Position numbers and translations under genes: made by a program. Shown here piece after piece: positions 240-10,211 of a stretch of DNA of 64,000 bases (its first letter is position 1; the number at the start of each line of letters is the position of its first letter). The notes beneath the pieces were generated by a model that was not told where the DNA came from, searched no databases, and worked only from the letters and a program-made list of their open reading frames with translations. The stretch lies in IMG/VR virus record IMGVR_UViG_3300005613_000001, positions 248,001 through 312,000 of that record; one strand, given 5' to 3'.

Positions 240-935
240 ATGATACACAATCAGAGAATTTATCAAATAATAATTCGAGGAGAAAGAAACACAGGAACAC
301 ACTGGTTGCATTCCCTATGCCGAGAGAATATTAAGAACGTGAAAATAGGCAATAAGGCATACTTATGGAAGCACGGATTTTTTCTAGGAAAAGAACCTAA
401 AAAAACAACACATTTAATTTTAGTGATTACAAAAGATGTATATGCATGGGTTTATTCATTGTATAAGCGCCCATATCATGTGAAAAGAACTTCAAATTTA
501 AATCACTTCATAAGAAGGCCATACCAATCATTCTGCACTACTAAATGGTTCGTCAAACACATGAAGCAAACTATGTATAAGGAGTTAACCTTTGAGAAAA
601 AACCAAATGGTAAATTATACGAAAACATCATACAACTAAGAAATGCAAAACATCGCCAATGGCTATCATTAAGAGGAGAGAGAAAAGTTGAATTTATAAA
701 ATACGAAGACCTATTTGCAACTCCTGAGAAAGTTATTGATACAATATGTCAAAAATACAAGTTACAGACCAAAAGATTCACAAACAAAATGGGTTGGCGA
801 AGTCAGTGGTCATCTCCTAAAACATATAAAGAAAATGATCCCAAAGCTCGCTTTAATAAAAAACAAATCCAATTTATAGCCGCTGAAAATGATTGGGAAA
901 CAGAGGCTCTCATAGATCAAATCGCCATTAAATAA
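240..935 (+). CDS. Sulfotransferase-like protein
   Basis: N-terminal GERNTGTHWL (5'-PSB-like loop), KDVYAW...SL, IKYEDL; TAAATA at 222-227. Confidence 0.55.
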   Translation: MIHNQRIYQIIIRGERNTGTHWLHSLCRENIKNVKIGNKAYLWKHGFFLGKEPKKTTHLILVITKDVYAWVYSLYKRPYHVKRTSNLNHFIRRPYQSFCTTKWFVKHMKQTMYKELTFEKKPNGKLYENIIQLRNAKHRQWLSLRGERKVEFIKYEDLFATPEKVIDTICQKYKLQTKRFTNKMGWRSQWSSPKTYKENDPKARFNKKQIQFIAAENDWETEALIDQIAIK

Positions 936-936
936 C

Positions 937-1722
937 CTACATAGTTATCTTGGGTAAATCTTCCATTCCTAACGCATATCGGAAAGCGCTAGATATCATA
1001 AAATTACTATTAAGCCAATCATTTGGAGTGAATTGGAAACAATGTCTTGGAGCATCTTTCTTAAAATGCGATCCAAAACAAATAGCCCAGATAACAGGCG
1101 CGGGGAATTTCTTTCTGATGAACTTAGACCAATGTTTATTAGAAAGAAATGCAGCAGCAGCCTCACTTATGGGACATGGACGCTGATAGTGTAACCCATA
1201 AACATCACCAGATACCCTGCTTTTATTTAACATTACGGCCCCAATAGCGTGCCAACTAGGAACCTTAAATTTAGTTTTTTTTAATAGCTTATATTGCTTA
1301 CGTAAGTATCTTTTTAATGTTGGACTATTAGGCTTTGCAATCATTAAATTTACAGATAGCCACTTTGTTGTCCCTGGCGAAAGCTCATCAGCCATAAATG
1401 TGGCCTTAGATTTCTCAAGACGATCAGTTAAAAGAGATAAATTATTCAAACAAATTACATCTACATCTACAAAAACCCCGCCATATTTAGTCAGAATTCT
1501 TGGCTTAACATAATCTGTCTTGTGTGCCCATTTCCTAATTTTCTCCCAATTTTCCGTCAAATCCGGCAAATACTCTCTGATGTTTTTGCTGTTTAATAAA
1601 TGAAAATCAAAGTCTTGAGAATTATGAAGCAGTGTTTTGAGTCCCAACTCACAAAGCGGGGGCATAGGGGGTCCATCCCAAAAACACCAAAGATTTTTTA
1701 GTTTGGGTTCAACTTCTTGCAT
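937..1722 (-). CDS. Glycosyltransferase, GT32/capsular polysaccharide synthesis type
   Basis: LWCFWDG, KTDYVKPRILTKYGGVFVDVD (DxD motif). Confidence 0.75.
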   Translation of the reverse strand: MQEVEPKLKNLWCFWDGPPMPPLCELGLKTLLHNSQDFDFHLLNSKNIREYLPDLTENWEKIRKWAHKTDYVKPRILTKYGGVFVDVDVICLNNLSLLTDRLEKSKATFMADELSPGTTKWLSVNLMIAKPNSPTLKRYLRKQYKLLKKTKFKVPSWHAIGAVMLNKSRVSGDVYGLHYQRPCPISEAAAAFLSNKHWSKFIRKKFPAPVIWAICFGSHFKKDAPRHCFQFTPNDWLNSNFMISSAFRYALGMEDLPKITM

Positions 1723-1734
1723 AATCTATATATA

Positions 1735-2793
1735 TCAACCATAAACCGTATTATGCGTCCGGTTAACCCTTACAAACGTGGTACATTTAGATAGATCTCT
1801 TAATTTATCAGTACCTACATAGGCGCAAGCTGATCTCAAGCCTCCTGTAATTTCCTGTATGATATTCCTAACTGTCCCTTTATATGGCACAGTGACGCAT
1901 TTCCCTTCTGCTGCACGGTACTTCTTTAGCCCGCCTGAATATTTCTCATTTGCCCTCTTGGAAGACATGCCATAGAAAACTAATTCTCTACGACTATGTT
2001 CATATTCAGTTCGCACACCATCTTTATCCAACCAATCTCCCTCACATTCGGCTGTCCCTGCTAACATTCCACCCAGCATCACAAAATCTGCTCCCGCTGC
2101 AAATGCCTTCACTACGTCACTGGGCTCTCTACACCCTCCATCTGCGCATATGTGCCCACCATGCCCATGAGCAGCATCGGCACATTCAATAATAGCACTC
2201 AATTGTGGGTAGCCAACACCCGTCACACGCCTCGTTGTACAAACACTTCCTGGCCCTATGCCTACCTTAACAATGTCTGCCGCCCCAGAAATTAACAATT
2301 CAGAAACCATCTCGGGAGTACAAACATTCCCCGCCATAATTACTGCATCGCTGCCAACAGCCTCTCTAAGTCTTTTTGCTCTATCTTGGAAAAATTCCGT
2401 ATAGCCATTGGCCGCGTCCATGCAAAAATATTTAATTGGATAACAATTACCCATTACAGCCCTAACATCAGAGAGTTTGGCAAAATCTTCATCCTTGATG
2501 CCCATTGTGTAAAACATTGCTTGCTGGTCAAAGTGCTCTGCCAAAGATTCGAACTCATAATGCTTATGCAAACAAGTTAACATCCCTTCAGATGATAATG
2601 CCTCGGCCATCGCAAAAGTGCCAGTAGAATCCATGTTCGCCGCAATAATGGGAACGCCCGTCCATGTCGCAGTGGAATTCAAAAACTTGTAAGTCTTTGT
2701 CAAATCTACCTTTGAACGACTCACTGTTTTAGATCGCTTCGGACGAATTAGAACATCCTGAAAATCCAACTTGATATCATTAATAATTTGCAT
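1735..2793 (-). CDS. guaC: GMP reductase
   Basis: KLDFQDVLIRPKRS, ANMD, DAANGY, KVGIGPGSVCTTR, ADGG, FYGMSS, GGLRSACAYVG. Confidence 0.95.
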   Translation of the reverse strand: MQIINDIKLDFQDVLIRPKRSKTVSRSKVDLTKTYKFLNSTATWTGVPIIAANMDSTGTFAMAEALSSEGMLTCLHKHYEFESLAEHFDQQAMFYTMGIKDEDFAKLSDVRAVMGNCYPIKYFCMDAANGYTEFFQDRAKRLREAVGSDAVIMAGNVCTPEMVSELLISGAADIVKVGIGPGSVCTTRRVTGVGYPQLSAIIECADAAHGHGGHICADGGCREPSDVVKAFAAGADFVMLGGMLAGTAECEGDWLDKDGVRTEYEHSRRELVFYGMSSKRANEKYSGGLKKYRAAEGKCVTVPYKGTVRNIIQEITGGLRSACAYVGTDKLRDLSKCTTFVRVNRTHNTVYG

Positions 2794-2836: not shown

Positions 2837-4249
2837 TTGTCAATGATAGATGTAGCACTAGCCACCAAAAATCGCACCGAACAATTCAAAAGCACTGTCA
2901 TTAACCTAAATGAGCAAGCTGTTGCTCATAAAATATTTCTATACGTTCTAGATGGAAATAATAACAATGAAATATCAGATTTTATAAAATCTAAACAGTG
3001 GAACTTTGCCAAAATACAAATCAATCAAGATCAACAAATCTTTCCCGATACAAAAGATTTAAACTGGCCTAAACTCTATAACTGGATAATCAATCAAGGC
3101 AACTCTCCATATGTCACATATTGGAGCGATGATATCATTGCAGACAAAGACTGCCTTAAACTTGCCCGTGAAAAATTAGAATCTAATGAAAAATATGGGG
3201 CGGTTGTTTTCGGAGGCTACAAAGACAGCCGATGGGAAAAAATAGGCCATCTAACTACGCCTCTGCAAACAATCCCATGCATCAATTATGGGCTTATCAA
3301 AAGAAAAGCGTTTGTAGACATTGATGATAAATACCAATTCTATCATGCAGATAGCGACCTGTCCCTTAAAATACTCTCCGAAGGATGGACAATCTACGTT
3401 GAAAATAAATGCAAAATAGATCACAAACGAGGCGAATGGGAAAACCCAGCCTCATTAGAAGAAGGCCAAAAGAAAGACAGGCAACGCTTTCTCGGCAAAT
3501 GGGCCAATTACTTTCCTGAGCATCTTTTTGAGTATCTAGATGACCCCTCAGACGCAGATGAATACCTCGCTAAAATCAAATTAGGACACGAAAGGATGTA
3601 TAACAGCAAAGCGGTTATTTGCACAATATTAAAACATCGTGATCCAATATTATTTAAACGCCTAGACAATTTAGCTAAGCTATTTAAATCTGCTCAAGTT
3701 ATTGTGGTGACAAAAGATTTTTACCTGGAAAGAAGGATAAAATTAGAAGGTTATGACTTCCAGGTTTTTTGTGCTAGAGAAAGCCTCGCAAATATGAGAA
3801 ATATCTACATGAGCGCCATGGAATTGCTAACTCCTAAACCTCAATATTGTCTTGTGGTAAACCCAGAAGTCTGCATCAGTCAAAACGGAATAGCACATAC
3901 AATTGGAAGCGGAGGGTGGCACGCTGTTGGTTCTAACTCTAGACTTCTAGGTAATTCAAATGAATTTTATTTCAGAGGGCCTAGCACCTATACAGATAAT
4001 ACAGGGGGGCGTATGAAAAAACATGATGCATGGATTGAAGACACACATCAAAAAACACCACAAAGAACAAAAAGACTGATTCCAGCCGCAAACTGCTTTG
4101 GAGACTTAATTATTTATAAATACTCTGCCATTGAAGGGTTGCGATATAACAAAGATGGTCACACAGGGTTTAACAAAATGATGAAAAGCCGAGGGTATAG
4201 AAGTATTAAAGTGAATCCAAATCAATTTACATTCAACTGGTACAAGTAA
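2837..4249 (+). CDS. Two-domain glycosyltransferase (GT2-like N-terminus plus second GT-A-like domain)
   Basis: YWSDD, FYHADSDLSLK in N-half; LANMRNIY and ANCFGDLIIYK in C-half. Confidence 0.6.
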   Translation: MSMIDVALATKNRTEQFKSTVINLNEQAVAHKIFLYVLDGNNNNEISDFIKSKQWNFAKIQINQDQQIFPDTKDLNWPKLYNWIINQGNSPYVTYWSDDIIADKDCLKLAREKLESNEKYGAVVFGGYKDSRWEKIGHLTTPLQTIPCINYGLIKRKAFVDIDDKYQFYHADSDLSLKILSEGWTIYVENKCKIDHKRGEWENPASLEEGQKKDRQRFLGKWANYFPEHLFEYLDDPSDADEYLAKIKLGHERMYNSKAVICTILKHRDPILFKRLDNLAKLFKSAQVIVVTKDFYLERRIKLEGYDFQVFCARESLANMRNIYMSAMELLTPKPQYCLVVNPEVCISQNGIAHTIGSGGWHAVGSNSRLLGNSNEFYFRGPSTYTDNTGGRMKKHDAWIEDTHQKTPQRTKRLIPAANCFGDLIIYKYSAIEGLRYNKDGHTGFNKMMKSRGYRSIKVNPNQFTFNWYK

Positions 4250-4736
4250 ACTCAATCACATCAAATCCATCACACGCCTCAATTAATTTAGATTTCCATT
4301 CATCCCCCAATTGAGGAAAGAATACATCCCCTTTATGTTTCCCCTTCACTTTGCTGACAATGATCTTATCTACTAAGCCCTCTTTGAGAGCCGAAGCGTA
4401 GATTTGTCCTCCTCCAATAATGAAGATTTCCCTATCGGGCATATTATCCTCAGCATATTGGATAGCGGATTGAAGATTAGAGCAAACAAAAGGTGCGCCT
4501 CTCTCTAGTTGCGACTTCAACCATGAAACATCTACCATTCTTGTCGAAACAATTATATTTTGACGATTGGGTAGGGGCCTTACGGGCAGGGATTGCCAAG
4601 TTCCCCGACCCATAATGACCACTTGCCCAACAGTCAATTCCTTAAAACGTTTTAAGTCGTGAGGAAGATACCAAGGTATTCTTCCATCACAACCTATTAC
4701 ATAATCTTCGTCATGTGCTACTAGAATCGTCTTCAC
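4233..4736 (-). CDS. folA: Dihydrofolate reductase (start moved to GTG at 4736)
   Basis: VAHDEDYVIG..GRIPW..PHDLKRFK, VIMGRGTW.SLP.RPLPNR.NI, FIIGGGQIY, GDVFFP. Confidence 0.93.
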   Translation of the reverse strand: MKTILVAHDEDYVIGCDGRIPWYLPHDLKRFKELTVGQVVIMGRGTWQSLPVRPLPNRQNIIVSTRMVDVSWLKSQLERGAPFVCSNLQSAIQYAEDNMPDREIFIIGGGQIYASALKEGLVDKIIVSKVKGKHKGDVFFPQLGDEWKSKLIEACDGFDVIEFTCTS

Positions 4737-4860
4737 AGCATTTCTTCTTTTCTGGACAGGTACATTCTTCCTCAGGGACACAATCCGTCTTCTCTGGCTC
4801 TGGGCACTTATCTGTTTGCTCGCAGCACTGATCGTCTTTCTTCTCAGGACAACAACTCAT
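4711..4860 (-). CDS. 49-aa Cys-rich, metallothionein-like peptide
   Basis: Hand translation MSCCPEKKDDQCCEQTDKCPEPEKTDCVPEEECTCPEKKKCCEDDSSST (10 Cys); GGAGG 5 nt upstream of ATG; fills the thyA-folA gap. Confidence 0.7.
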   Translation of the reverse strand: MSCCPEKKDDQCCEQTDKCPEPEKTDCVPEEECTCPEKKKCCEDDSSST

Positions 4861-4870
4861 ATTAGCCTCC

Positions 4871-5797
4871 TTAAACGGCTACAGGGATTTTAATGACAGG
4901 TTGGGGGTTATAATCTGTTATCTTAAAATTATCCATCGTATAGGAATCAATATCCGAGGCGGGTTCTACTTCTAATTTTGGACAATCCACTTTAGGTCTT
5001 GAGAGGTATTCTTCTACCGCCTCAATTTGATCTACATAAATATGTGAATCTATTGTATGGTGAACAAATTCATATGGTTTATATCCAGTTTGTTGAGAAA
5101 GCATATGAATAAGTGCCGAATAAAAACAAATGTTATATGGAACACCTACAGGGAAATCACAGCTTCTTTGTGTAAGAACACCACTTAATTTATCTTCATG
5201 CACAAACACTTGGAACGTGTAGTGGCAGGGTGCTAATCTCATCATATCAATTTGCTTAGGATTCCACAGGGAGAATAAATTGCGGCGACTGTTGGGATTG
5301 GTTTTTAATTGTTCTATCATCCAAGCAAGTTGATCGAAGCCACCCAAGCCATAAGTTTTGTATTCATAAGTTTGTTCCATTTCAAGTTTCAATCCAATAC
5401 AATAATCTCTAGGAGAATTTCTTGAGCCTCCAATCCCATTACCATAGTCTCCACCAAAATGCCTCAATTGAAATCCATAAACCGGACCTAATGAGGCGGG
5501 GGCATAACCGTGTTTCTTTTCAAACTCTTCATCTACCCACGGAGTCCAGAAATCCGCCCCTAATTTTTTAAGGTCATTATTATTGGTAGAGCCACTTATG
5601 AACCAGAGCAATTCTGCAAACACTGCCTTGGGCCATATTTTGCGACGGGTAAGCAAAGGAAAGTATTTGTCTATTTTATAGCGAGATTGGATGCAAAATA
5701 CAGCAAGGGAATCTACACCCGTTCTATTCTCTTTTTTAACGCCCTCATTCAAAATGAGTTCTAGGGCTGCATCATAATCATCAAGCAGGTAGGTCAT
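4871..5797 (-). CDS. thyA: Thymidylate synthase
   Basis: RTGV, FPLLT, ELLWFISG, LGPVYGFQLR, SRR...WNP, LAPCH, QRSCDFPVGVPYN, DSHIY. Confidence 0.96.
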   Translation of the reverse strand: MTYLLDDYDAALELILNEGVKKENRTGVDSLAVFCIQSRYKIDKYFPLLTRRKIWPKAVFAELLWFISGSTNNNDLKKLGADFWTPWVDEEFEKKHGYAPASLGPVYGFQLRHFGGDYGNGIGGSRNSPRDYCIGLKLEMEQTYEYKTYGLGGFDQLAWMIEQLKTNPNSRRNLFSLWNPKQIDMMRLAPCHYTFQVFVHEDKLSGVLTQRSCDFPVGVPYNICFYSALIHMLSQQTGYKPYEFVHHTIDSHIYVDQIEAVEEYLSRPKVDCPKLEVEPASDIDSYTMDNFKITDYNPQPVIKIPVAV

Positions 5798-6117
5798 ACG
5801 TATTGCTTACATTCGCTAAAGGGCAATATTTCTACAAAGTGGTATGGCACAGTAGAATCATCATCATATTCTTCCGGTTTTCCCTCAATCTTATACACGG
5901 CCATGCGGGCATCATCGGGGGTGTGTTTTATTTTCCAAAGATCCATCACCTTTTGACCTAATGTTTTATCTTCTTGATCTTCAGTCAATTTTGCAATATG
6001 CATCTTCGGAGGGAGGGGAGAACTAAGGGATACAACCGAACTGGTCAACCCGTCTAGCGGACCACCATAATGAATTGTGTCAAATTCGTAGCCGTATCCA
6101 TCAATATCAATTTTCAT
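5794..6117 (-). CDS. Hypothetical protein
   Basis: ORF overlaps thyA start (ATGA); contains GGPLDG motif common in small phage proteins. Confidence 0.6.
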   Translation of the reverse strand: MKIDIDGYGYEFDTIHYGGPLDGLTSSVVSLSSPLPPKMHIAKLTEDQEDKTLGQKVMDLWKIKHTPDDARMAVYKIEGKPEEYDDDSTVPYHFVEILPFSECKQYV

Positions 6118-6308: not shown

Positions 6309-6337
6309 AATATAGATATATTGCGGTTAAAAGTCAA
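6309..6337 (-). promoter_or_regulatory. sigma70-like promoter for the hypothetical-thyA-folA-guaC region
   Basis: TTGACT-N17-TATATT. Confidence 0.5.
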
Positions 6338-7320
6338 CAAGATAAAACAGACTCTAAAATTGAATCGCTTAACACCCTTAATTCGGGGTGACACGGAAAG
6401 CATATTATTCGGTTATAGATGTCATTCGCCACCGAAGAATCATCTATTGGCTGATAATACCTGTGTAATTTAATATAGGCATTATCTAAAGAAGGTGGGC
6501 AATTGCTTAACAAGGGCACGCAATGTGGAATGTGCTTTATCTTACGAGTGATTAGGGGAGTTTTCCCAAACTTAACCCCTATTCTCACAACTCTTTCATA
6601 TTGCTCTATGTAATCTCGTCGCATTTGATCTACAGTAGCCAATCTCTGCAAAATAAAAGAGGCGGCGGGGTCGGACATCTTGCCATTAAAGGCAGTATTT
6701 TTTATAGATTGCGTCTTCCACTTACCAAAATTAATAATAGCTCTAAACAATTCATAATACTTCTTCTCTATAACAGCACAGCCTCCTTCTCCAAACCCCC
6801 AAGGCTTCGTGTGATGAAGACTAATAACTTCATTAACATCATGATCCGGCAAGGCGTCAAACGCAGAGCATGAATCACAAATTACAATCTTGCCTTTTTT
6901 TTTGTATTTCTTTACCGAATCCACTACACCAAATGGATTTGTAATCAAAATAGCGTCATACTCATCGTCACCAATTAAATCAAGATTTATCATCCCTTTT
7001 TGATCGCAGTCAATTACCTTTGCTTTTTTTAAAGGGCCTTGCTTTGCACAATGAAAATTGAAACTTGAGACTACCCAACGTAATTCTTTCCCTGCTAGGT
7101 GGTTATGCATTTCAACAAGGGCAAAAAGCGCCAAAGTACCACTCGCACAAGCAACCACAGCACTCTTGTCTTGATTAATATTTAAAATATCAGCTAATCT
7201 TTCCTCCAATAGTATAGACACGGGGCCAAAGTTGGTCCAATGATTAGATAATACACTCCGGTTGAGTGTATTTTCTATAAAATCCCAATTTACAGGCTTG
7301 TTTTCTACGAAAGAAATCAT
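6334..7320 (-). CDS. DegT/DnrJ/EryC1/StrS family PLP aminotransferase
   Basis: TNFGP, ASGTLAL, VICDSCSAF, SLHHTKPWGFGEGG, NGKMSD, FPCHP. Confidence 0.85.
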   Translation of the reverse strand: MISFVENKPVNWDFIENTLNRSVLSNHWTNFGPVSILLEERLADILNINQDKSAVVACASGTLALFALVEMHNHLAGKELRWVVSSFNFHCAKQGPLKKAKVIDCDQKGMINLDLIGDDEYDAILITNPFGVVDSVKKYKKKGKIVICDSCSAFDALPDHDVNEVISLHHTKPWGFGEGGCAVIEKKYYELFRAIINFGKWKTQSIKNTAFNGKMSDPAASFILQRLATVDQMRRDYIEQYERVVRIGVKFGKTPLITRKIKHIPHCVPLLSNCPPSLDNAYIKLHRYYQPIDDSSVANDIYNRIICFPCHPELRVLSDSILESVLSC

Positions 7321-8556
7321 ATGGATAAAATTGCTGTTTTCCCTTGCGGATCAGAAATCGGACTGGAAATTGCTAGATCTTTTCAGGGGATTAAAAATGT
7401 AAAACTTGTTGGCATCTCCTCAGTACCTAATCATGGTAAATTTATATACAATGATTATATTGAAATTGATGGTTCAGTAGACGACCCTAATTTCATCTCT
7501 CAATTCTCTAACCTTATCAGAGAAAACGATATAGATTTTATTTTCCCTGCCCACGATGATGTCGTTTTATCATTTGCACAACATTTTGACACAAAAACCA
7601 TAGGCTCGCCCCATAAAACGTGTTTGATTACTCGCTATAAAAGCCAAACATATCGACACTTTAACAAAATCATAAGAACCCCCAAATATTGCGATATGAA
7701 CTATCCGCTTTTTATAAAACCAGATAAAGGGCAAGGCTCAAAAGGGTGTCACATCGTTAGAAACGCTAAAGAACTAAAATTCTATTTAACTCCCGAAGTG
7801 CTCGCATTGGAATATTTACCAGGAGAAGAATACACCGTAGAATGTTTCACGGATTATAAAGGACAACTCTTATACTGCGCCCCGAGACAAAGAAGAAGAA
7901 TAAGCAATGGCATCAGTGTGAATACAAACAATGTTTCTTTGTCGCCTGATATAGAAGCTATGGCAAATGCTATTAATGATAATTTAACATTAAACGGGGC
8001 ATGGTTTTTTCAAGCTAAATACAGTAGAACTGATGAATTGACTCTAATGGAGATCGCCCCAAGGATCGGAGGTTCTTCAGGATTAAGCAGAATCAAAGGA
8101 GTAAATCTTCCTGTCTTAAGTTATTTCAATCATCTAAAACAACCCGTGACCGTAGCCCCTAATGAATTTAATGTAGAACTAGACAGGGCTTGGAGTAATA
8201 AATATAAATTAAATATTGATTATAGCCACCTGTATGTTGATTTTGATGATTGCTTATACATAGATGGCAAAATAAACAGTGACCTAATTAAGCTTATCGT
8301 GCAATGCCGTAATGAAGGTAAATCAATTCACCTATTAAGCAAACATAGCGGGAATTTACATGAAATCTTACTTAAACTAAAAATAAAAGACTTATTTGAC
8401 ACAGTAGTACAGATGCCCAAGCATACTAAAAAATCATATTACATAAACCGTACTAATTCAATATTTATAGATGACTCATTTGAAGAGCGACAAGATGTAT
8501 ATAAAATCATTAGAATTCCAGTATTTGCACCGGATGCCATAGAGGGTTTATTATGA
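7321..8556 (+). CDS. ATP-grasp protein with C-terminal HAD-like domain
   Basis: VFPCGSEIGLEI, FIKPDKGQGSKG, EYLPGEEYTV, LMEIAPRIGG; HAD-like YVDFDDCL and FIDDSFEER. Confidence 0.8.
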   Translation: MDKIAVFPCGSEIGLEIARSFQGIKNVKLVGISSVPNHGKFIYNDYIEIDGSVDDPNFISQFSNLIRENDIDFIFPAHDDVVLSFAQHFDTKTIGSPHKTCLITRYKSQTYRHFNKIIRTPKYCDMNYPLFIKPDKGQGSKGCHIVRNAKELKFYLTPEVLALEYLPGEEYTVECFTDYKGQLLYCAPRQRRRISNGISVNTNNVSLSPDIEAMANAINDNLTLNGAWFFQAKYSRTDELTLMEIAPRIGGSSGLSRIKGVNLPVLSYFNHLKQPVTVAPNEFNVELDRAWSNKYKLNIDYSHLYVDFDDCLYIDGKINSDLIKLIVQCRNEGKSIHLLSKHSGNLHEILLKLKIKDLFDTVVQMPKHTKKSYYINRTNSIFIDDSFEERQDVYKIIRIPVFAPDAIEGLL

Positions 8557-9281
8557 ATGAAAAAGAATTTTTAGATTCAGTAAGCAAAACATACAAAATG
8601 GAAGGCTCCCCCTATAATCAAGGCAAAAGATCAATAGCCATAGGAGTTTTTAGTGAATTCATCAAACCAGGAGGAACAGCACTAGAATTAGGATGTGCTG
8701 ATGGATATGAGACTTCATTAATCTCAAAACTAGTCTCCAAATTAGATGTAATAGATGGTTCTATACAATTCATAGAAGATTGTATGTTAAAATGCCCAGA
8801 GGCCAATTTTGTGCATGACCTATTCGAAAATTACTCTTCAAAACAAAAATACGATTACATCTTTGCCTCTTACGTGCTTGAACACGTAGCAGATGTGTCT
8901 CCTGTATTAAATATGATAAAAAGCCACCTGAAACCGGGTGGTCTATTTTTTACAGTCGTACCCAATGCTAATTCATTTTCCAGACAATTAGCAGTCAATA
9001 TGGGCCTAATCAAAGACTTGAAAGGTTTAACAGAAAACGACATTAATCACGGGCATAGAAGGGTATATGATTCATTATCTTTATGTAGAGATTTAAAAGA
9101 CGGTGGATTTACAATAATAGATAGAGGCGGAATACTTTTTAAATTGCTTGCAGACTTTCAAATGGATGAAATGCTGAATTCAAAAATAATCACAGACCAA
9201 CATTTGCAAGGGTTATTTAAAATGGGTGTGCTTTATCCTAGTTTGTGTGATTCAATATATGCCATATGTAAAATCATATGA
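8553..9281 (+). CDS. Class I SAM-dependent methyltransferase
   Basis: ALELGCADG, YVLEHV, LKPGG.....VPNA, GHRRVYD. Confidence 0.85.
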   Translation: MNEKEFLDSVSKTYKMEGSPYNQGKRSIAIGVFSEFIKPGGTALELGCADGYETSLISKLVSKLDVIDGSIQFIEDCMLKCPEANFVHDLFENYSSKQKYDYIFASYVLEHVADVSPVLNMIKSHLKPGGLFFTVVPNANSFSRQLAVNMGLIKDLKGLTENDINHGHRRVYDSLSLCRDLKDGGFTIIDRGGILFKLLADFQMDEMLNSKIITDQHLQGLFKMGVLYPSLCDSIYAICKII

Positions 9282-10211
9282 AGAAAATATGTTCTTTTTG
9301 TATTTTTCCCTATAATTCATATCTTTTCCCCTATGATCCATATTACAGGACACCATCTTCATTGCCTCTGATGTTTTCTTATCTGGCTTCACCAGCCACC
9401 CCCACAACAACTCATATGCAAATTCATAATAAAAAATATCAAGTGCCCTTCCTATATCAATCATAAACGAATTACGCAGAGTGGCATGAAGCTTGTAAAT
9501 AAACCAACTTGCAAGCGCCCCCGCAACAAACAAATATATTGTCTCATCTTGATGGTTACTTTTTACTTTCTCTAAAATTTCATCAATAAAATCTGTTGCT
9601 GTTCTATAAGGAATATTTATATGACTATAATTTTCAAGCCCCGCTCGCTCCCCAAAATCTAAAAAATAAGGAGGGCCTACTATTACTATCCTACGATTCT
9701 TATACTTATTCAAAAACTCAATCAATTGCTTATTGATAGCATAAGATCTAAAAATTCCACCATGAAACAAAATGTCTTTATGCCTAATAAAATCATTCAT
9801 AATTTTATGCAGATGTGCAATACGTTTACTTTTGTATTTCATGTGTTGGCGTTTGGCTCGGCGGTAGTGATGAGCAGTATCATTGATGGCATATAAAATA
9901 TTTTCATCAACTCTTGATGTTATCAACTTCAAAATGTCAAAATATATTTCATCTTTTACAAACCATTTTGTAGTTTGTTTAACCATACCAGCAGCTAACT
10001 CTTTAAGATCCGCCTCAGAATCTATATTAAATTCACGATCAGGAAGTGCTTTATATATAAAATCCCAAACGGCGTGTTGGTGTTTCACGAAATAGAAATA
10101 GTTTTTAGAATCAATCCTATCGGAAAAATAATGCATTTTAGGTAAATGTACCTTAATATTATATTTTTCACTCAGGACAACTGACTTGATCTTAGGCTTG
10201 ACATGTATCAC
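9252..10211 (-). CDS. Putative GT-D-fold glycosyltransferase-like protein
   Basis: RIVIVGP, LFVAGALA, MIDIGRALD resemble GT-D family motifs. Confidence 0.35.
   Translation of the reverse strand: MIHVKPKIKSVVLSEKYNIKVHLPKMHYFSDRIDSKNYFYFVKHQHAVWDFIYKALPDREFNIDSEADLKELAAGMVKQTTKWFVKDEIYFDILKLITSRVDENILYAINDTAHHYRRAKRQHMKYKSKRIAHLHKIMNDFIRHKDILFHGGIFRSYAINKQLIEFLNKYKNRRIVIVGPPYFLDFGERAGLENYSHINIPYRTATDFIDEILEKVKSNHQDETIYLFVAGALASWFIYKLHATLRNSFMIDIGRALDIFYYEFAYELLWGWLVKPDKKTSEAMKMVSCNMDHRGKDMNYREKYKKNIFSSYDFTYGIY

What the first reader, a model, noticed from the sequence alone, without database searches (positions are those of the whole stretch)
4711..4860. Hidden metallothionein-like peptide between thyA and folA
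49-aa ORF below the ORF-track cutoff with 10 Cys (three CC pairs, a CxC, repeated CPE-K), no aromatic residues, acidic/Lys composition and a strong GGAGG RBS. It overlaps the DHFR start by 26 nt. This resembles metallothionein composition rather than a known phage family. Inference: metal buffering, or a leader peptide coupling folA translation.
Basis: partly seen in the sequence, partly recalled or inferred. Interest (0 to 1): 0.6.

Follow-up and report, generated by a model that had tools for sequence, protein, structure and literature searches.

The report
Conserved cysteine-rich mini-gene before phage folA
A 49-codon gene between the thymidylate synthase and dihydrofolate reductase genes of a 527-kb phage is real and conserved; it encodes an acidic peptide that is one-fifth cysteine, most likely binds metal like a metallothionein, and belongs to no known family.

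Summary
Window 4860..4711 (minus strand) is a 49-codon ORF with 10 Cys and no aromatic residues. GGAGG sits 5 nt before its ATG, and it overlaps the GTG start of folA by 26 nt.

It is not a chance ORF. One exhaustive HMMER search found a single true relative, P0002 (73 aa, 14 Cys). P0002 lies at the same place (g107-thyA-ORF-folA, with a convergent 470-aa gene) in a diverged phage contig, L017. Synonymous sites between the two phages are saturated. Even so, the frame is open, the indels are in frame, and 9 of 10 Cys align, four of them through TGC/TGT synonymous changes. The peptide sequence itself is therefore under selection, which excludes a spacer and argues strongly against a leader whose sequence does not matter.

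No Pfam, NCBIfam, PHROG, PADLOC, PDB or Rfam match was found, and both structure predictors see no autonomous fold.

My best reading is a cytoplasmic metal-thiolate (metallothionein-like) peptide of a new, narrowly distributed phage family. Its translation probably also delivers ribosomes to the weakly signalled folA start. Metal binding, expression and physiological role are untested. More distant relatives lack the gene, so it is accessory cargo at a variable thyA-folA junction.

The parts
4711..4860 (-). Small ORF (49 codons + TGA) encoding the acidic, 20%-Cys peptide. Residues 1-41 are free of overlap. Residues 42-49 are read from DNA that also encodes the DHFR N-terminus.
   Evidence: homologue P0002 in synteny
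4866..4870 (-). GGAGG Shine-Dalgarno of the small ORF, 5 nt before ATG 4860 and directly after the thyA stop (TAA 4873-4871).
   Evidence: SD cores are enriched before long ORFs of this genome (34% vs 6% at random positions); L017 has AAAGGAG 6 nt before its ATG
4711..4736 (-). 26-nt dual-coding overlap: the tail of the small ORF and the first 8 2/3 codons of folA. It differs from L017 at one base only, a change that is synonymous in folA and D45N in the peptide.
4233..4736 (-). folA (DHFR, 167 aa), starting at GTG 4736-4734. It is preceded only by a purine run (4752-4741) that is a poor SD match.
   Evidence: Pfam PF00186 E 4.8e-40; N-terminus matches relatives; upstream changes are nonsynonymous in the folA frame
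4871..5797 (-). thyA (thymidylate synthase, 308 aa), upstream gene of the block.
   Evidence: Pfam PF00303 E 5.4e-86
5794..6117 (-). g107, a conserved 107-aa protein of unknown function. It overlaps the thyA start by 4 nt (ATGA) and is the first gene of the tightly packed g107-thyA-ORF-folA block.
   Evidence: 92.5% identical in L017; homologue directly before folA in L022
6309..6337 (-). Promoter-like site (TTGACT-17-TATATT, 10/12) at the far end of the 216-nt gap upstream of g107, partly inside the preceding gene's 3' end. It is only a candidate promoter for the block.
   Evidence: consensus match only; the number of such sites in the region is not above shuffles

Best explanation
Window 4860..4711(-) is a genuine protein-coding gene of a huge (527-kb) phage. 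It sits in a tightly packed block, g107-thyA-ORF-folA. Its product has no hydrophobic core, no signal peptide and no predicted autonomous fold, but it has 10 conserved cysteines arranged as CC / C / CxC modules. The most likely mechanism is therefore that it folds in the cytoplasm around metal-thiolate clusters. By Cys count that would be roughly 3-4 Zn(II)/Cd(II) or more Cu(I). In other words, it would work like a metallothionein: a small metal buffer, store or donor, or a thiol sink, made together with the phage's nucleotide-metabolism enzymes. As a secondary effect, ribosomes translating it run over the folA GTG start, which lies 26 nt inside the ORF behind a poor SD. They probably deliver or unmask initiation there. 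This would replace the direct ATGA thyA/folA coupling seen in relatives that lack the gene. Shown: the ORF, its initiation signals, synteny and purifying selection on the peptide sequence. Inferred: translation in vivo, metal binding, coupling and physiological role. Rough odds: real selected coding gene 0.9; metal-thiolate binder 0.55; contributes to folA translation 0.5.
For: ORF anatomy and composition. Extreme Cys content relative to all ORFs of the genome. Codon usage typical of in-frame coding sequence. SD use in this genome. The only true hit among 1.84 billion cluster representatives is P0002 (E 9.7e-5 alone; 3e-33 with the profile). P0002 lies between thyA and folA on L017 with the same flanking genes (g107 92.5%, DHFR 66.7%, g470 74.5% identity). 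Flanking genes have dS about 1-2, with only 31-50% of four-fold sites identical. The ORF nevertheless stays open, its indels are multiples of 3 and it includes an in-frame 75-nt tandem duplication. Nine Cys align, four of them with TGC/TGT synonymous changes, and pN is 0.21 with pS saturated. Neutral simulation at that divergence gives P(open) about 0.12 and P(all Cys kept) about 1e-7 (about 1e-3 even at 25% divergence). The sense frame has the most synonymous changes (7 of 20 changed codons, against 0-4 in the other five frames). No autonomous fold: AF2 pLDDT 60.6 and mostly coil; ESM Atlas model of P0002 pLDDT 0.23. The folA start and overlap are conserved. Relatives without the gene have a thyA/folA ATGA overlap.
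Against: There is no similarity to any metallothionein or other family in Pfam, NCBIfam, PHROGs, PADLOC or PDB. Net charge is about -8, which is unusual for metallothioneins. They generally offset cluster charge with Lys (own knowledge). Only two lineages are known, so conservation rests on one pairwise comparison of about 34 free codons, aligned by protein similarity. No RNA or protein evidence exists, since no sequencing run could be listed. No metal-related genes were seen nearby; the neighbours are nucleotide and sugar metabolism genes. Coupling is inferred from geometry only, and the local RNA fold is no more stable than shuffles (z = 0.01).
Confidence: 0.5

Rival explanations
1. Leader ORF only: the ORF is translated solely to load ribosomes onto the poorly signalled folA GTG start, and the peptide itself has no function.
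For: The 26-nt overlap, the GTG start and the weak SD are all conserved in L017. Relatives couple thyA and folA directly by ATGA.
Against: A leader whose sequence is irrelevant should not keep 9 aligned Cys codons across saturated synonymous divergence. It should also not show dN/dS in the range of the neighbouring enzymes. A 49-73-codon leader is also far longer than coupling needs.
Confidence: 0.1
2. Protein-binding or regulatory subunit: the Cys-rich acidic peptide, perhaps Zn-stabilised, binds DHFR, another phage enzyme or a host factor and modulates it. It is not a free metal buffer.
For: The peptide stayed linked to folA even where thyA was swapped for a 35%-identical, non-orthologous version. 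Its acidic, disordered character is common in binding partners and mimics (own knowledge).
Against: The linkage to folA is already explained by the physical overlap. No interaction was tested because no complex-prediction job was sent. No family or structural match points to a partner.
Confidence: 0.15
3. A different cofactor or redox chemistry: an Fe-S cluster, heme bound through the Cys-Pro motifs, or a sacrificial thiol or redox buffer protecting the catalytic Cys of ThyA.
For: Three Cys-Pro dipeptides, with the short motif C-T-C-P-[ED]-K conserved in both proteins. High thiol density.
Against: There is no ferredoxin-type CxxC spacing (CxxC count is 0). Heme-regulatory CP motifs are usually followed by hydrophobic residues (own knowledge), whereas here they are followed by E or D. 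No family hit was found.
Confidence: 0.1
4. Not a gene: a purine-rich spacer that happens to be open, or an antisense gene on the plus strand.
For: The ORF is short and its GA-rich codons inflate codon-usage scores. The antisense frame is also open in L017 (93 aa).
Against: There is a syntenic conserved ORF with ATG plus SD in both phages and with in-frame indels. The Cys-retention probability under neutrality is very low. The antisense frame is interrupted in the window (38 aa, GTG start), has negative codon scores (-0.18 to -0.24) and has few synonymous changes. No Rfam match or stable RNA structure was found.
Confidence: 0.05
5. RiPP precursor peptide (for example SCIFF/ranthipeptide-like or lanthipeptide-like) modified by a nearby maturase.
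For: It is a small Cys-rich peptide with a Ser/Thr tail.
Against: The Ser/Thr tail is dictated by the overlapping folA codons. Pfam scans of ORFs of 90 aa or more in window 1-11.5 kb found sugar and nucleotide enzymes but no radical-SAM or lanthionine synthetase. NCBIfam gave no precursor-family hit.
Confidence: 0.03

Closest known systems
Metallothioneins in the operational sense (polyphyletic class of small Cys-rich metal-thiolate proteins; PMC7387436, PMC10612145)
   Same: About 5.5 kDa, about 20% Cys in CC and CxC motifs, no aromatic residues or His, no hydrophobic core, no predicted fold without metal, and growth by in-frame module duplication in the homologue.
   Different: No sequence match to any curated metallothionein family. 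Strongly acidic (pI 4.25). Phage-encoded and embedded in a thyA-folA block. Metal binding unproven.
Bacterial metallothioneins of the SmtA/BmtA type (Pfam PF02069) and mycobacterial MymT
   Same: Small prokaryote-associated Cys-rich peptides thought to buffer Zn or Cu.
   Different: No hit at E <= 10. It lacks the His ligands and aromatic residues of the SmtA zinc-finger-like fold (own knowledge). The Cys spacing differs.
Phage 'metallothionein' auxiliary-gene candidates reported in metagenomic surveys (PMC13317609; PMC12917443)
   Same: The idea that phages can carry metal-sequestering peptides.
   Different: The two papers list these as AMG candidates without detail. Any such call that rests on known metallothionein models would miss this peptide, which matches none of them.
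Translationally coupled overlapping genes and upstream leader ORFs in bacteria and phages
   Same: The stop of the upstream ORF lies downstream of the next gene's start. The downstream start is GTG with a weak SD. Relatives use ATGA overlaps at the same junction.
   Different: The upstream ORF here is under selection for its own amino-acid sequence.

Membership tests
Metallothionein (operational class) | Low molecular mass (< about 10 kDa) | tested here: met
   5.5 kDa for the window peptide and 7.9 kDa for P0002
Metallothionein (operational class) | High Cys content with CC / CxC motifs; few or no aromatic residues | tested here: met
   20.4% and 19.2% Cys; 3 CC and 1-2 CxC; 0 aromatic residues and 0 His in the window peptide, 1 Tyr and 1 His in P0002
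Metallothionein (operational class) | Binds d10 metal ions in metal-thiolate clusters | not testable with these tools
   Needs metal titration and native MS of the peptide. There is only indirect support: no autonomous fold and conserved Cys.
Curated metallothionein sequence families (Pfam, incl. PF02069 bacterial SmtA type; NCBIfam) | Significant match to a family profile | tested here: not met
   0 families at E <= 10 for both peptides in Pfam-A and NCBIfam. The PDB profile search also gave 0 hits.
Translationally coupled gene pair / leader ORF | Upstream ORF terminates at or after the downstream start; downstream start lacks a strong SD; arrangement conserved | tested here: met
   26-nt overlap, GTG start and a purine run only, identical geometry in L017
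Translationally coupled gene pair / leader ORF | Downstream expression depends on upstream translation | not testable with these tools
   Needs reporter constructs with the ORF start mutated.
RiPP precursor (SCIFF / ranthipeptide, lanthipeptide) | Adjacent maturase (radical SAM/SPASM, LanB/C/M) and a precursor-family match | tested here: not met
   No such domain among ORFs of 90 aa or more in window 1-11.5 kb. No NCBIfam precursor hit.
Structured RNA leader (e.g. THF riboswitch) upstream of folA | Rfam match or unusually stable or conserved structure | tested here: not met
   Only chance-level Rfam hits (E 2.6 and 4.5, far below gathering scores). Fold z-score 0.01.

The most novel reading that the evidence does not exclude
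A phage-specific metallothionein family, unrelated in sequence to all known ones, is co-expressed and translationally linked with the dTMP-cycle enzymes. Through it a huge phage would control Zn/Cu availability or thiol redox state for its own nucleotide and DNA synthesis, or withhold metal from the host. The same ORF would gate DHFR synthesis, so that metal or thiol status and folate reduction are tied together.
Probability: 0.15. Interest if true: 0.65.

Novelty: new variant of a known kind. Interest (0 to 1): 0.45.

Why it matters
Small ORFs are routinely dropped from phage annotation. This one appears to be missing from the protein collection, which holds its neighbours. Yet it passes a comparative test for selection on its amino-acid sequence. 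If the peptide binds metal, it would add a sequence-novel, phage-borne family to the metallothioneins. It would also point to metal or thiol management as part of how huge phages run their own nucleotide metabolism. In addition, it is a clean natural example of an accessory gene inserted into a translationally coupled thyA-folA pair that seems to have preserved the coupling by overlapping the downstream start. The practical value is modest until binding and expression are shown, and only two lineages carry it so far.

Tried and rejected
- **Word-index protein search** with the peptide found nothing. With the two-member profile it found only P0002.
- **P0001**, the top HMMER hit (1,396 aa, 12 stretches, 29% identity), is a repetitive low-complexity protein and was rejected as spurious.
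- **Family, structure and RNA libraries** (Pfam, PHROGs, NCBIfam, PADLOC, PDB sequences, Rfam) gave no usable hit.
- **ESM Atlas** gave no feature hit. Its structural neighbours come from a pLDDT-0.23 model and are meaningless.
- **AF2** gave pLDDT 60.6, so no fold search was run on the model.
- **tblastn against deposited phages** gave only chance-level hits (E >= 0.7).
- **Back-translated and exact DNA patterns** in IMG/VR and in GTDB genomes found no further copy.
- **Anchoring on folA, g107 and g470** in IMG/VR found no close relative.
- **ThyA and DHFR relatives at 44-65% identity.** L002, L003, L004, L006, L008, L019 and L022 were read and none has the Cys-rich ORF. The contig of P0008 shows no called gene between the upstream fragment and folA, but its DNA could not be read.
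- **Sequencing runs:** none was listed, so read laying was not used and there is no expression evidence.
- **+1 frameshift fusion of peptide to DHFR** was rejected. A shift at the TGA would delete the first eight DHFR residues (V-K-T-I-L-V-A-H). This segment is conserved across the relatives and by position should form the first beta-strand (own knowledge). Both phages keep separate frames.
- **Extended DHFR start at GTG 4781** was rejected. The changes upstream of GTG 4736 are synonymous in the peptide frame and nonsynonymous in the folA frame.
- **Alternative genetic code** is not indicated. TAA, TGA and TAG all terminate long ORFs.
- **Complex prediction** was not sent, because I do not claim a protein-protein contact.

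Full report
**Where the window lies.**
The window is bases 248,001-312,000 of a 527,112-bp virus record, 40.8% G+C and rated complete. All three stop codons end long ORFs, so the standard bacterial code was used throughout.

**The observation.**
- On the minus strand, thyA (4871..5797; Pfam PF00303, E 5e-86) ends with TAA at 4873-4871.
- GGAGG follows immediately (4870-4866), then a 5-nt spacer, then ATG at 4860.
- The ORF runs 49 codons to TGA at 4713-4711.
- DHFR (PF00186, E 5e-40) begins at GTG 4736-4734, inside the ORF in the +1 frame, so the overlap is 26 nt.
- The peptide has 10 Cys (20.4%), three CC, one CxC, three Cys-Pro and no CxxC. It has no aromatic residue or His, one Val, one Met, 15 acidic against 7 Lys, and pI 4.25.

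**Is it more than chance?**
- Within this genome it is the most Cys-rich ORF apart from off-frame readings of a repeat array at 449.9-452.8 kb. The mean Cys fraction of 1,910 ORFs of 40-70 aa is 3.1%.
- Its codon usage scores 0.20 bits/codon. In-frame windows of long genes score 0.24 +/- 0.12, and off-frame windows have a 95th percentile of 0.14. The other five frames of the region score -0.24 to +0.08.
- SD cores precede 34% of long ORFs against 6% of random positions, so GGAGG-N5-ATG is a normal strong start for this phage.

**Relatives.**
- The word-index search found nothing.
- The exhaustive HMMER search of 1.84 billion representatives gave one spurious repetitive hit (P0001) and one true relative, P0002. 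P0002 has 73 aa and 14 Cys. It shares 59% identity over the query's last 33 residues and ends in the same short C-terminal block.
- P0002 is encoded on ENA contig L017 (4,581 bp) and, near-identically, on L018 from a second sample.
- L017 has the same gene order as the window: g107, thyA, the Cys-rich ORF, folA, and a convergent gene of about 470 aa.
- Amino-acid identities are g107 92.5%, DHFR 66.7% and g470 74.5%. ThyA is only 35.3% identical, so thyA was replaced by a non-orthologous version while the small ORF stayed.
- L017's ORF has AAAGGAG 6 nt before its ATG. It has the same 26-nt overlap with a GTG-initiated folA.

**Selection on the peptide.**
- Between the two phages the flanking genes have dS of about 1-2, with only 31-50% of four-fold sites identical, and dN/dS of 0.05-0.14.
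- In the 34 aligned codons of the small ORF that do not overlap folA, pN is 0.21 while synonymous sites are saturated.
- Nine of the ten Cys align with Cys (eight of them in the codons that do not overlap folA), four through TGC/TGT synonymous changes. The tenth lies in a 7-codon in-frame insertion.
- L017 carries an in-frame 75-nt tandem duplication (2.1 copies) that repeats the module CC-x6-C-x5/6-C-x-C.
- A neutral simulation at the observed four-fold divergence gives about 0.12 for keeping the frame open and about 1e-7 for keeping all Cys. Even at 25% divergence the Cys figure is about 1e-3.
- Of 20 changed codons, 7 are synonymous in the sense frame, against 0-4 in any other frame.
- In the conserved stretch just before the folA start (E-E-C-T-C-P-E-K-K-K-C), 3 of 4 base changes are synonymous in the peptide frame, and all 4 are nonsynonymous in the folA frame. 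So folA does not extend upstream of GTG 4736.
- Within the overlap, the single difference is synonymous for DHFR and D45N for the peptide. The peptide's last eight residues are therefore largely dictated by DHFR.
- Caveats: this is one pairwise comparison, it is short, and it was aligned by protein similarity.

**What it is not.**
- No family match was found in Pfam (E <= 10), NCBIfam, PHROGs, PADLOC or PDB sequences.
- It is not an RNA element. Rfam gave only chance-level hits, and the fold is no more stable than shuffles, z = 0.01.
- It is not an antisense gene. That frame is interrupted in the window and scores negative.
- It is not a RiPP locus. The neighbours are GMP reductase/IMPDH, glycosyltransferases, a DegT aminotransferase, an ATP-grasp enzyme and a methyltransferase.
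- It is not a frameshift fusion. A +1 shift at the stop would delete the first eight DHFR residues, a conserved N-terminal segment expected to form the first beta-strand.

**Distribution.**
- The second assembly of the same phage (L007, L012) is essentially identical.
- More distant relatives (ThyA 55-64% or DHFR 44-49% identical) lack the ORF. L003 and L019 have thyA and folA overlapping by ATGA. L022 has g107 directly before folA.
- L002, L004 and L008 carry other, unrelated genes after thyA; in L002 and L008 these lie between thyA and folA.
- One contig has an unread 75-aa gene at the junction.
- The thyA-folA junction is thus a variable slot, and the Cys-rich gene is accessory cargo seen so far in two lineages.
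- Absence from protein databases is weak evidence, since such short ORFs are often not called.

**Mechanism.**
- The peptide cannot fold by hydrophobic collapse. It has no signal peptide. Both predictors see little or no structure: AF2 pLDDT 60.6 and mostly coil, and the ESM Atlas model of P0002 at pLDDT 0.23.
- Conserved, densely spaced thiols in a cytoplasmic, otherwise polar peptide are the hallmark of metal-thiolate cluster proteins (established knowledge; definitions in PMC7387436 and PMC10612145).
- I therefore rate a metallothionein-like metal binder as the most likely chemistry, at about 0.55. Its role would be metal buffering, metal donation or a thiol sink during phage nucleotide and DNA synthesis; this part is inference only.
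- The strong acidity argues that it is not a classical metallothionein. It leaves room for partner binding or for other cofactors.
- The conserved geometry suggests that translation of the ORF also serves folA initiation. The geometry is a strong SD on the ORF and a GTG with only a purine run (4752-4741) for folA, 26 nt inside the ORF. This would substitute for the ATGA coupling of relatives. It is inference from geometry, at about 0.5.

**Comparison and novelty.**
- The peptide works most like a metallothionein, but it fails the only testable membership criterion for any curated metallothionein family.
- Metagenomic surveys mention phage 'metallothionein' auxiliary genes (PMC13317609, PMC12917443). 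A phage metal-binding peptide is therefore not new as an idea.
- This peptide would be a sequence-novel family with an unusual acidic make-up and an unusual location.
- I file it as a new variant of a known kind, of moderate interest (0.45).

**Limits.**
- No sequencing run could be listed, so there is no expression evidence and read laying was not used.
- The metagenome scan and the large protein searches are exhausted.

Noticed in passing
L017:665-1543 versus window 4871-5797(-): ThyA of the sister phage is only 35% identical (292 vs 308 aa), whereas the genes on both sides are 67-92% identical. This is a non-orthologous replacement of thyA in situ, and it left the Cys-rich ORF and folA untouched.
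   Followed up: partly
L002:3864-4436; L004:3980-4597; L008:3957-4834; contig of P0007 (no DNA): The thyA-folA junction is a variable slot. Different relatives carry a 190-aa gene, a 205-aa gene after thyA (L004; no folA seen nearby), two unrelated ORFs, or an unseen 75-aa gene there. L003 and L019 instead have a direct ATGA overlap.
   Followed up: partly
window 5794-6117(-); L017:349-672; L022:647-988: g107 is a 107-113-aa protein with no family match. It is highly conserved (92.5% in L017) and always sits just upstream of thyA or folA, overlapping thyA by ATGA in the window. It may be an unrecognised partner of the dTMP-cycle genes.
   Followed up: partly
G000:C1:449896-452847 (outside the window): A long repeat array gives off-frame ORFs with 20-28% Cys, built from short W/S/G/C-rich units. 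It looks like the shadow of a glycine-rich (possibly collagen-like) repeat gene in another frame or strand.
   Followed up: no
window 2837-4249(+): A 470-aa gene converges on folA, and their 3' ends overlap by 17 nt (4233-4249). It has only a weak glycosyltransferase signal (TIGR04440, E 2.4e-4) and is conserved at 74.5% in L017.
   Followed up: no
window 240-2793 and 6334-10211: The nucleotide-metabolism block is embedded in sugar and nucleotide genes. These are a GMP reductase/IMPDH-family gene (1735-2793), capsule-type glycosyltransferases, a DegT-family aminotransferase, an ATP-grasp enzyme, a methyltransferase and a GT-D-like protein.
   Followed up: no
window 4236-4736(-): The nearest named cellular DHFR relatives (37-43% identity) are from Bacteroidota. 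This is a weak hint about the host, and it sits oddly with the phage's frequent use of GGAGG-type SD sites.
   Followed up: no
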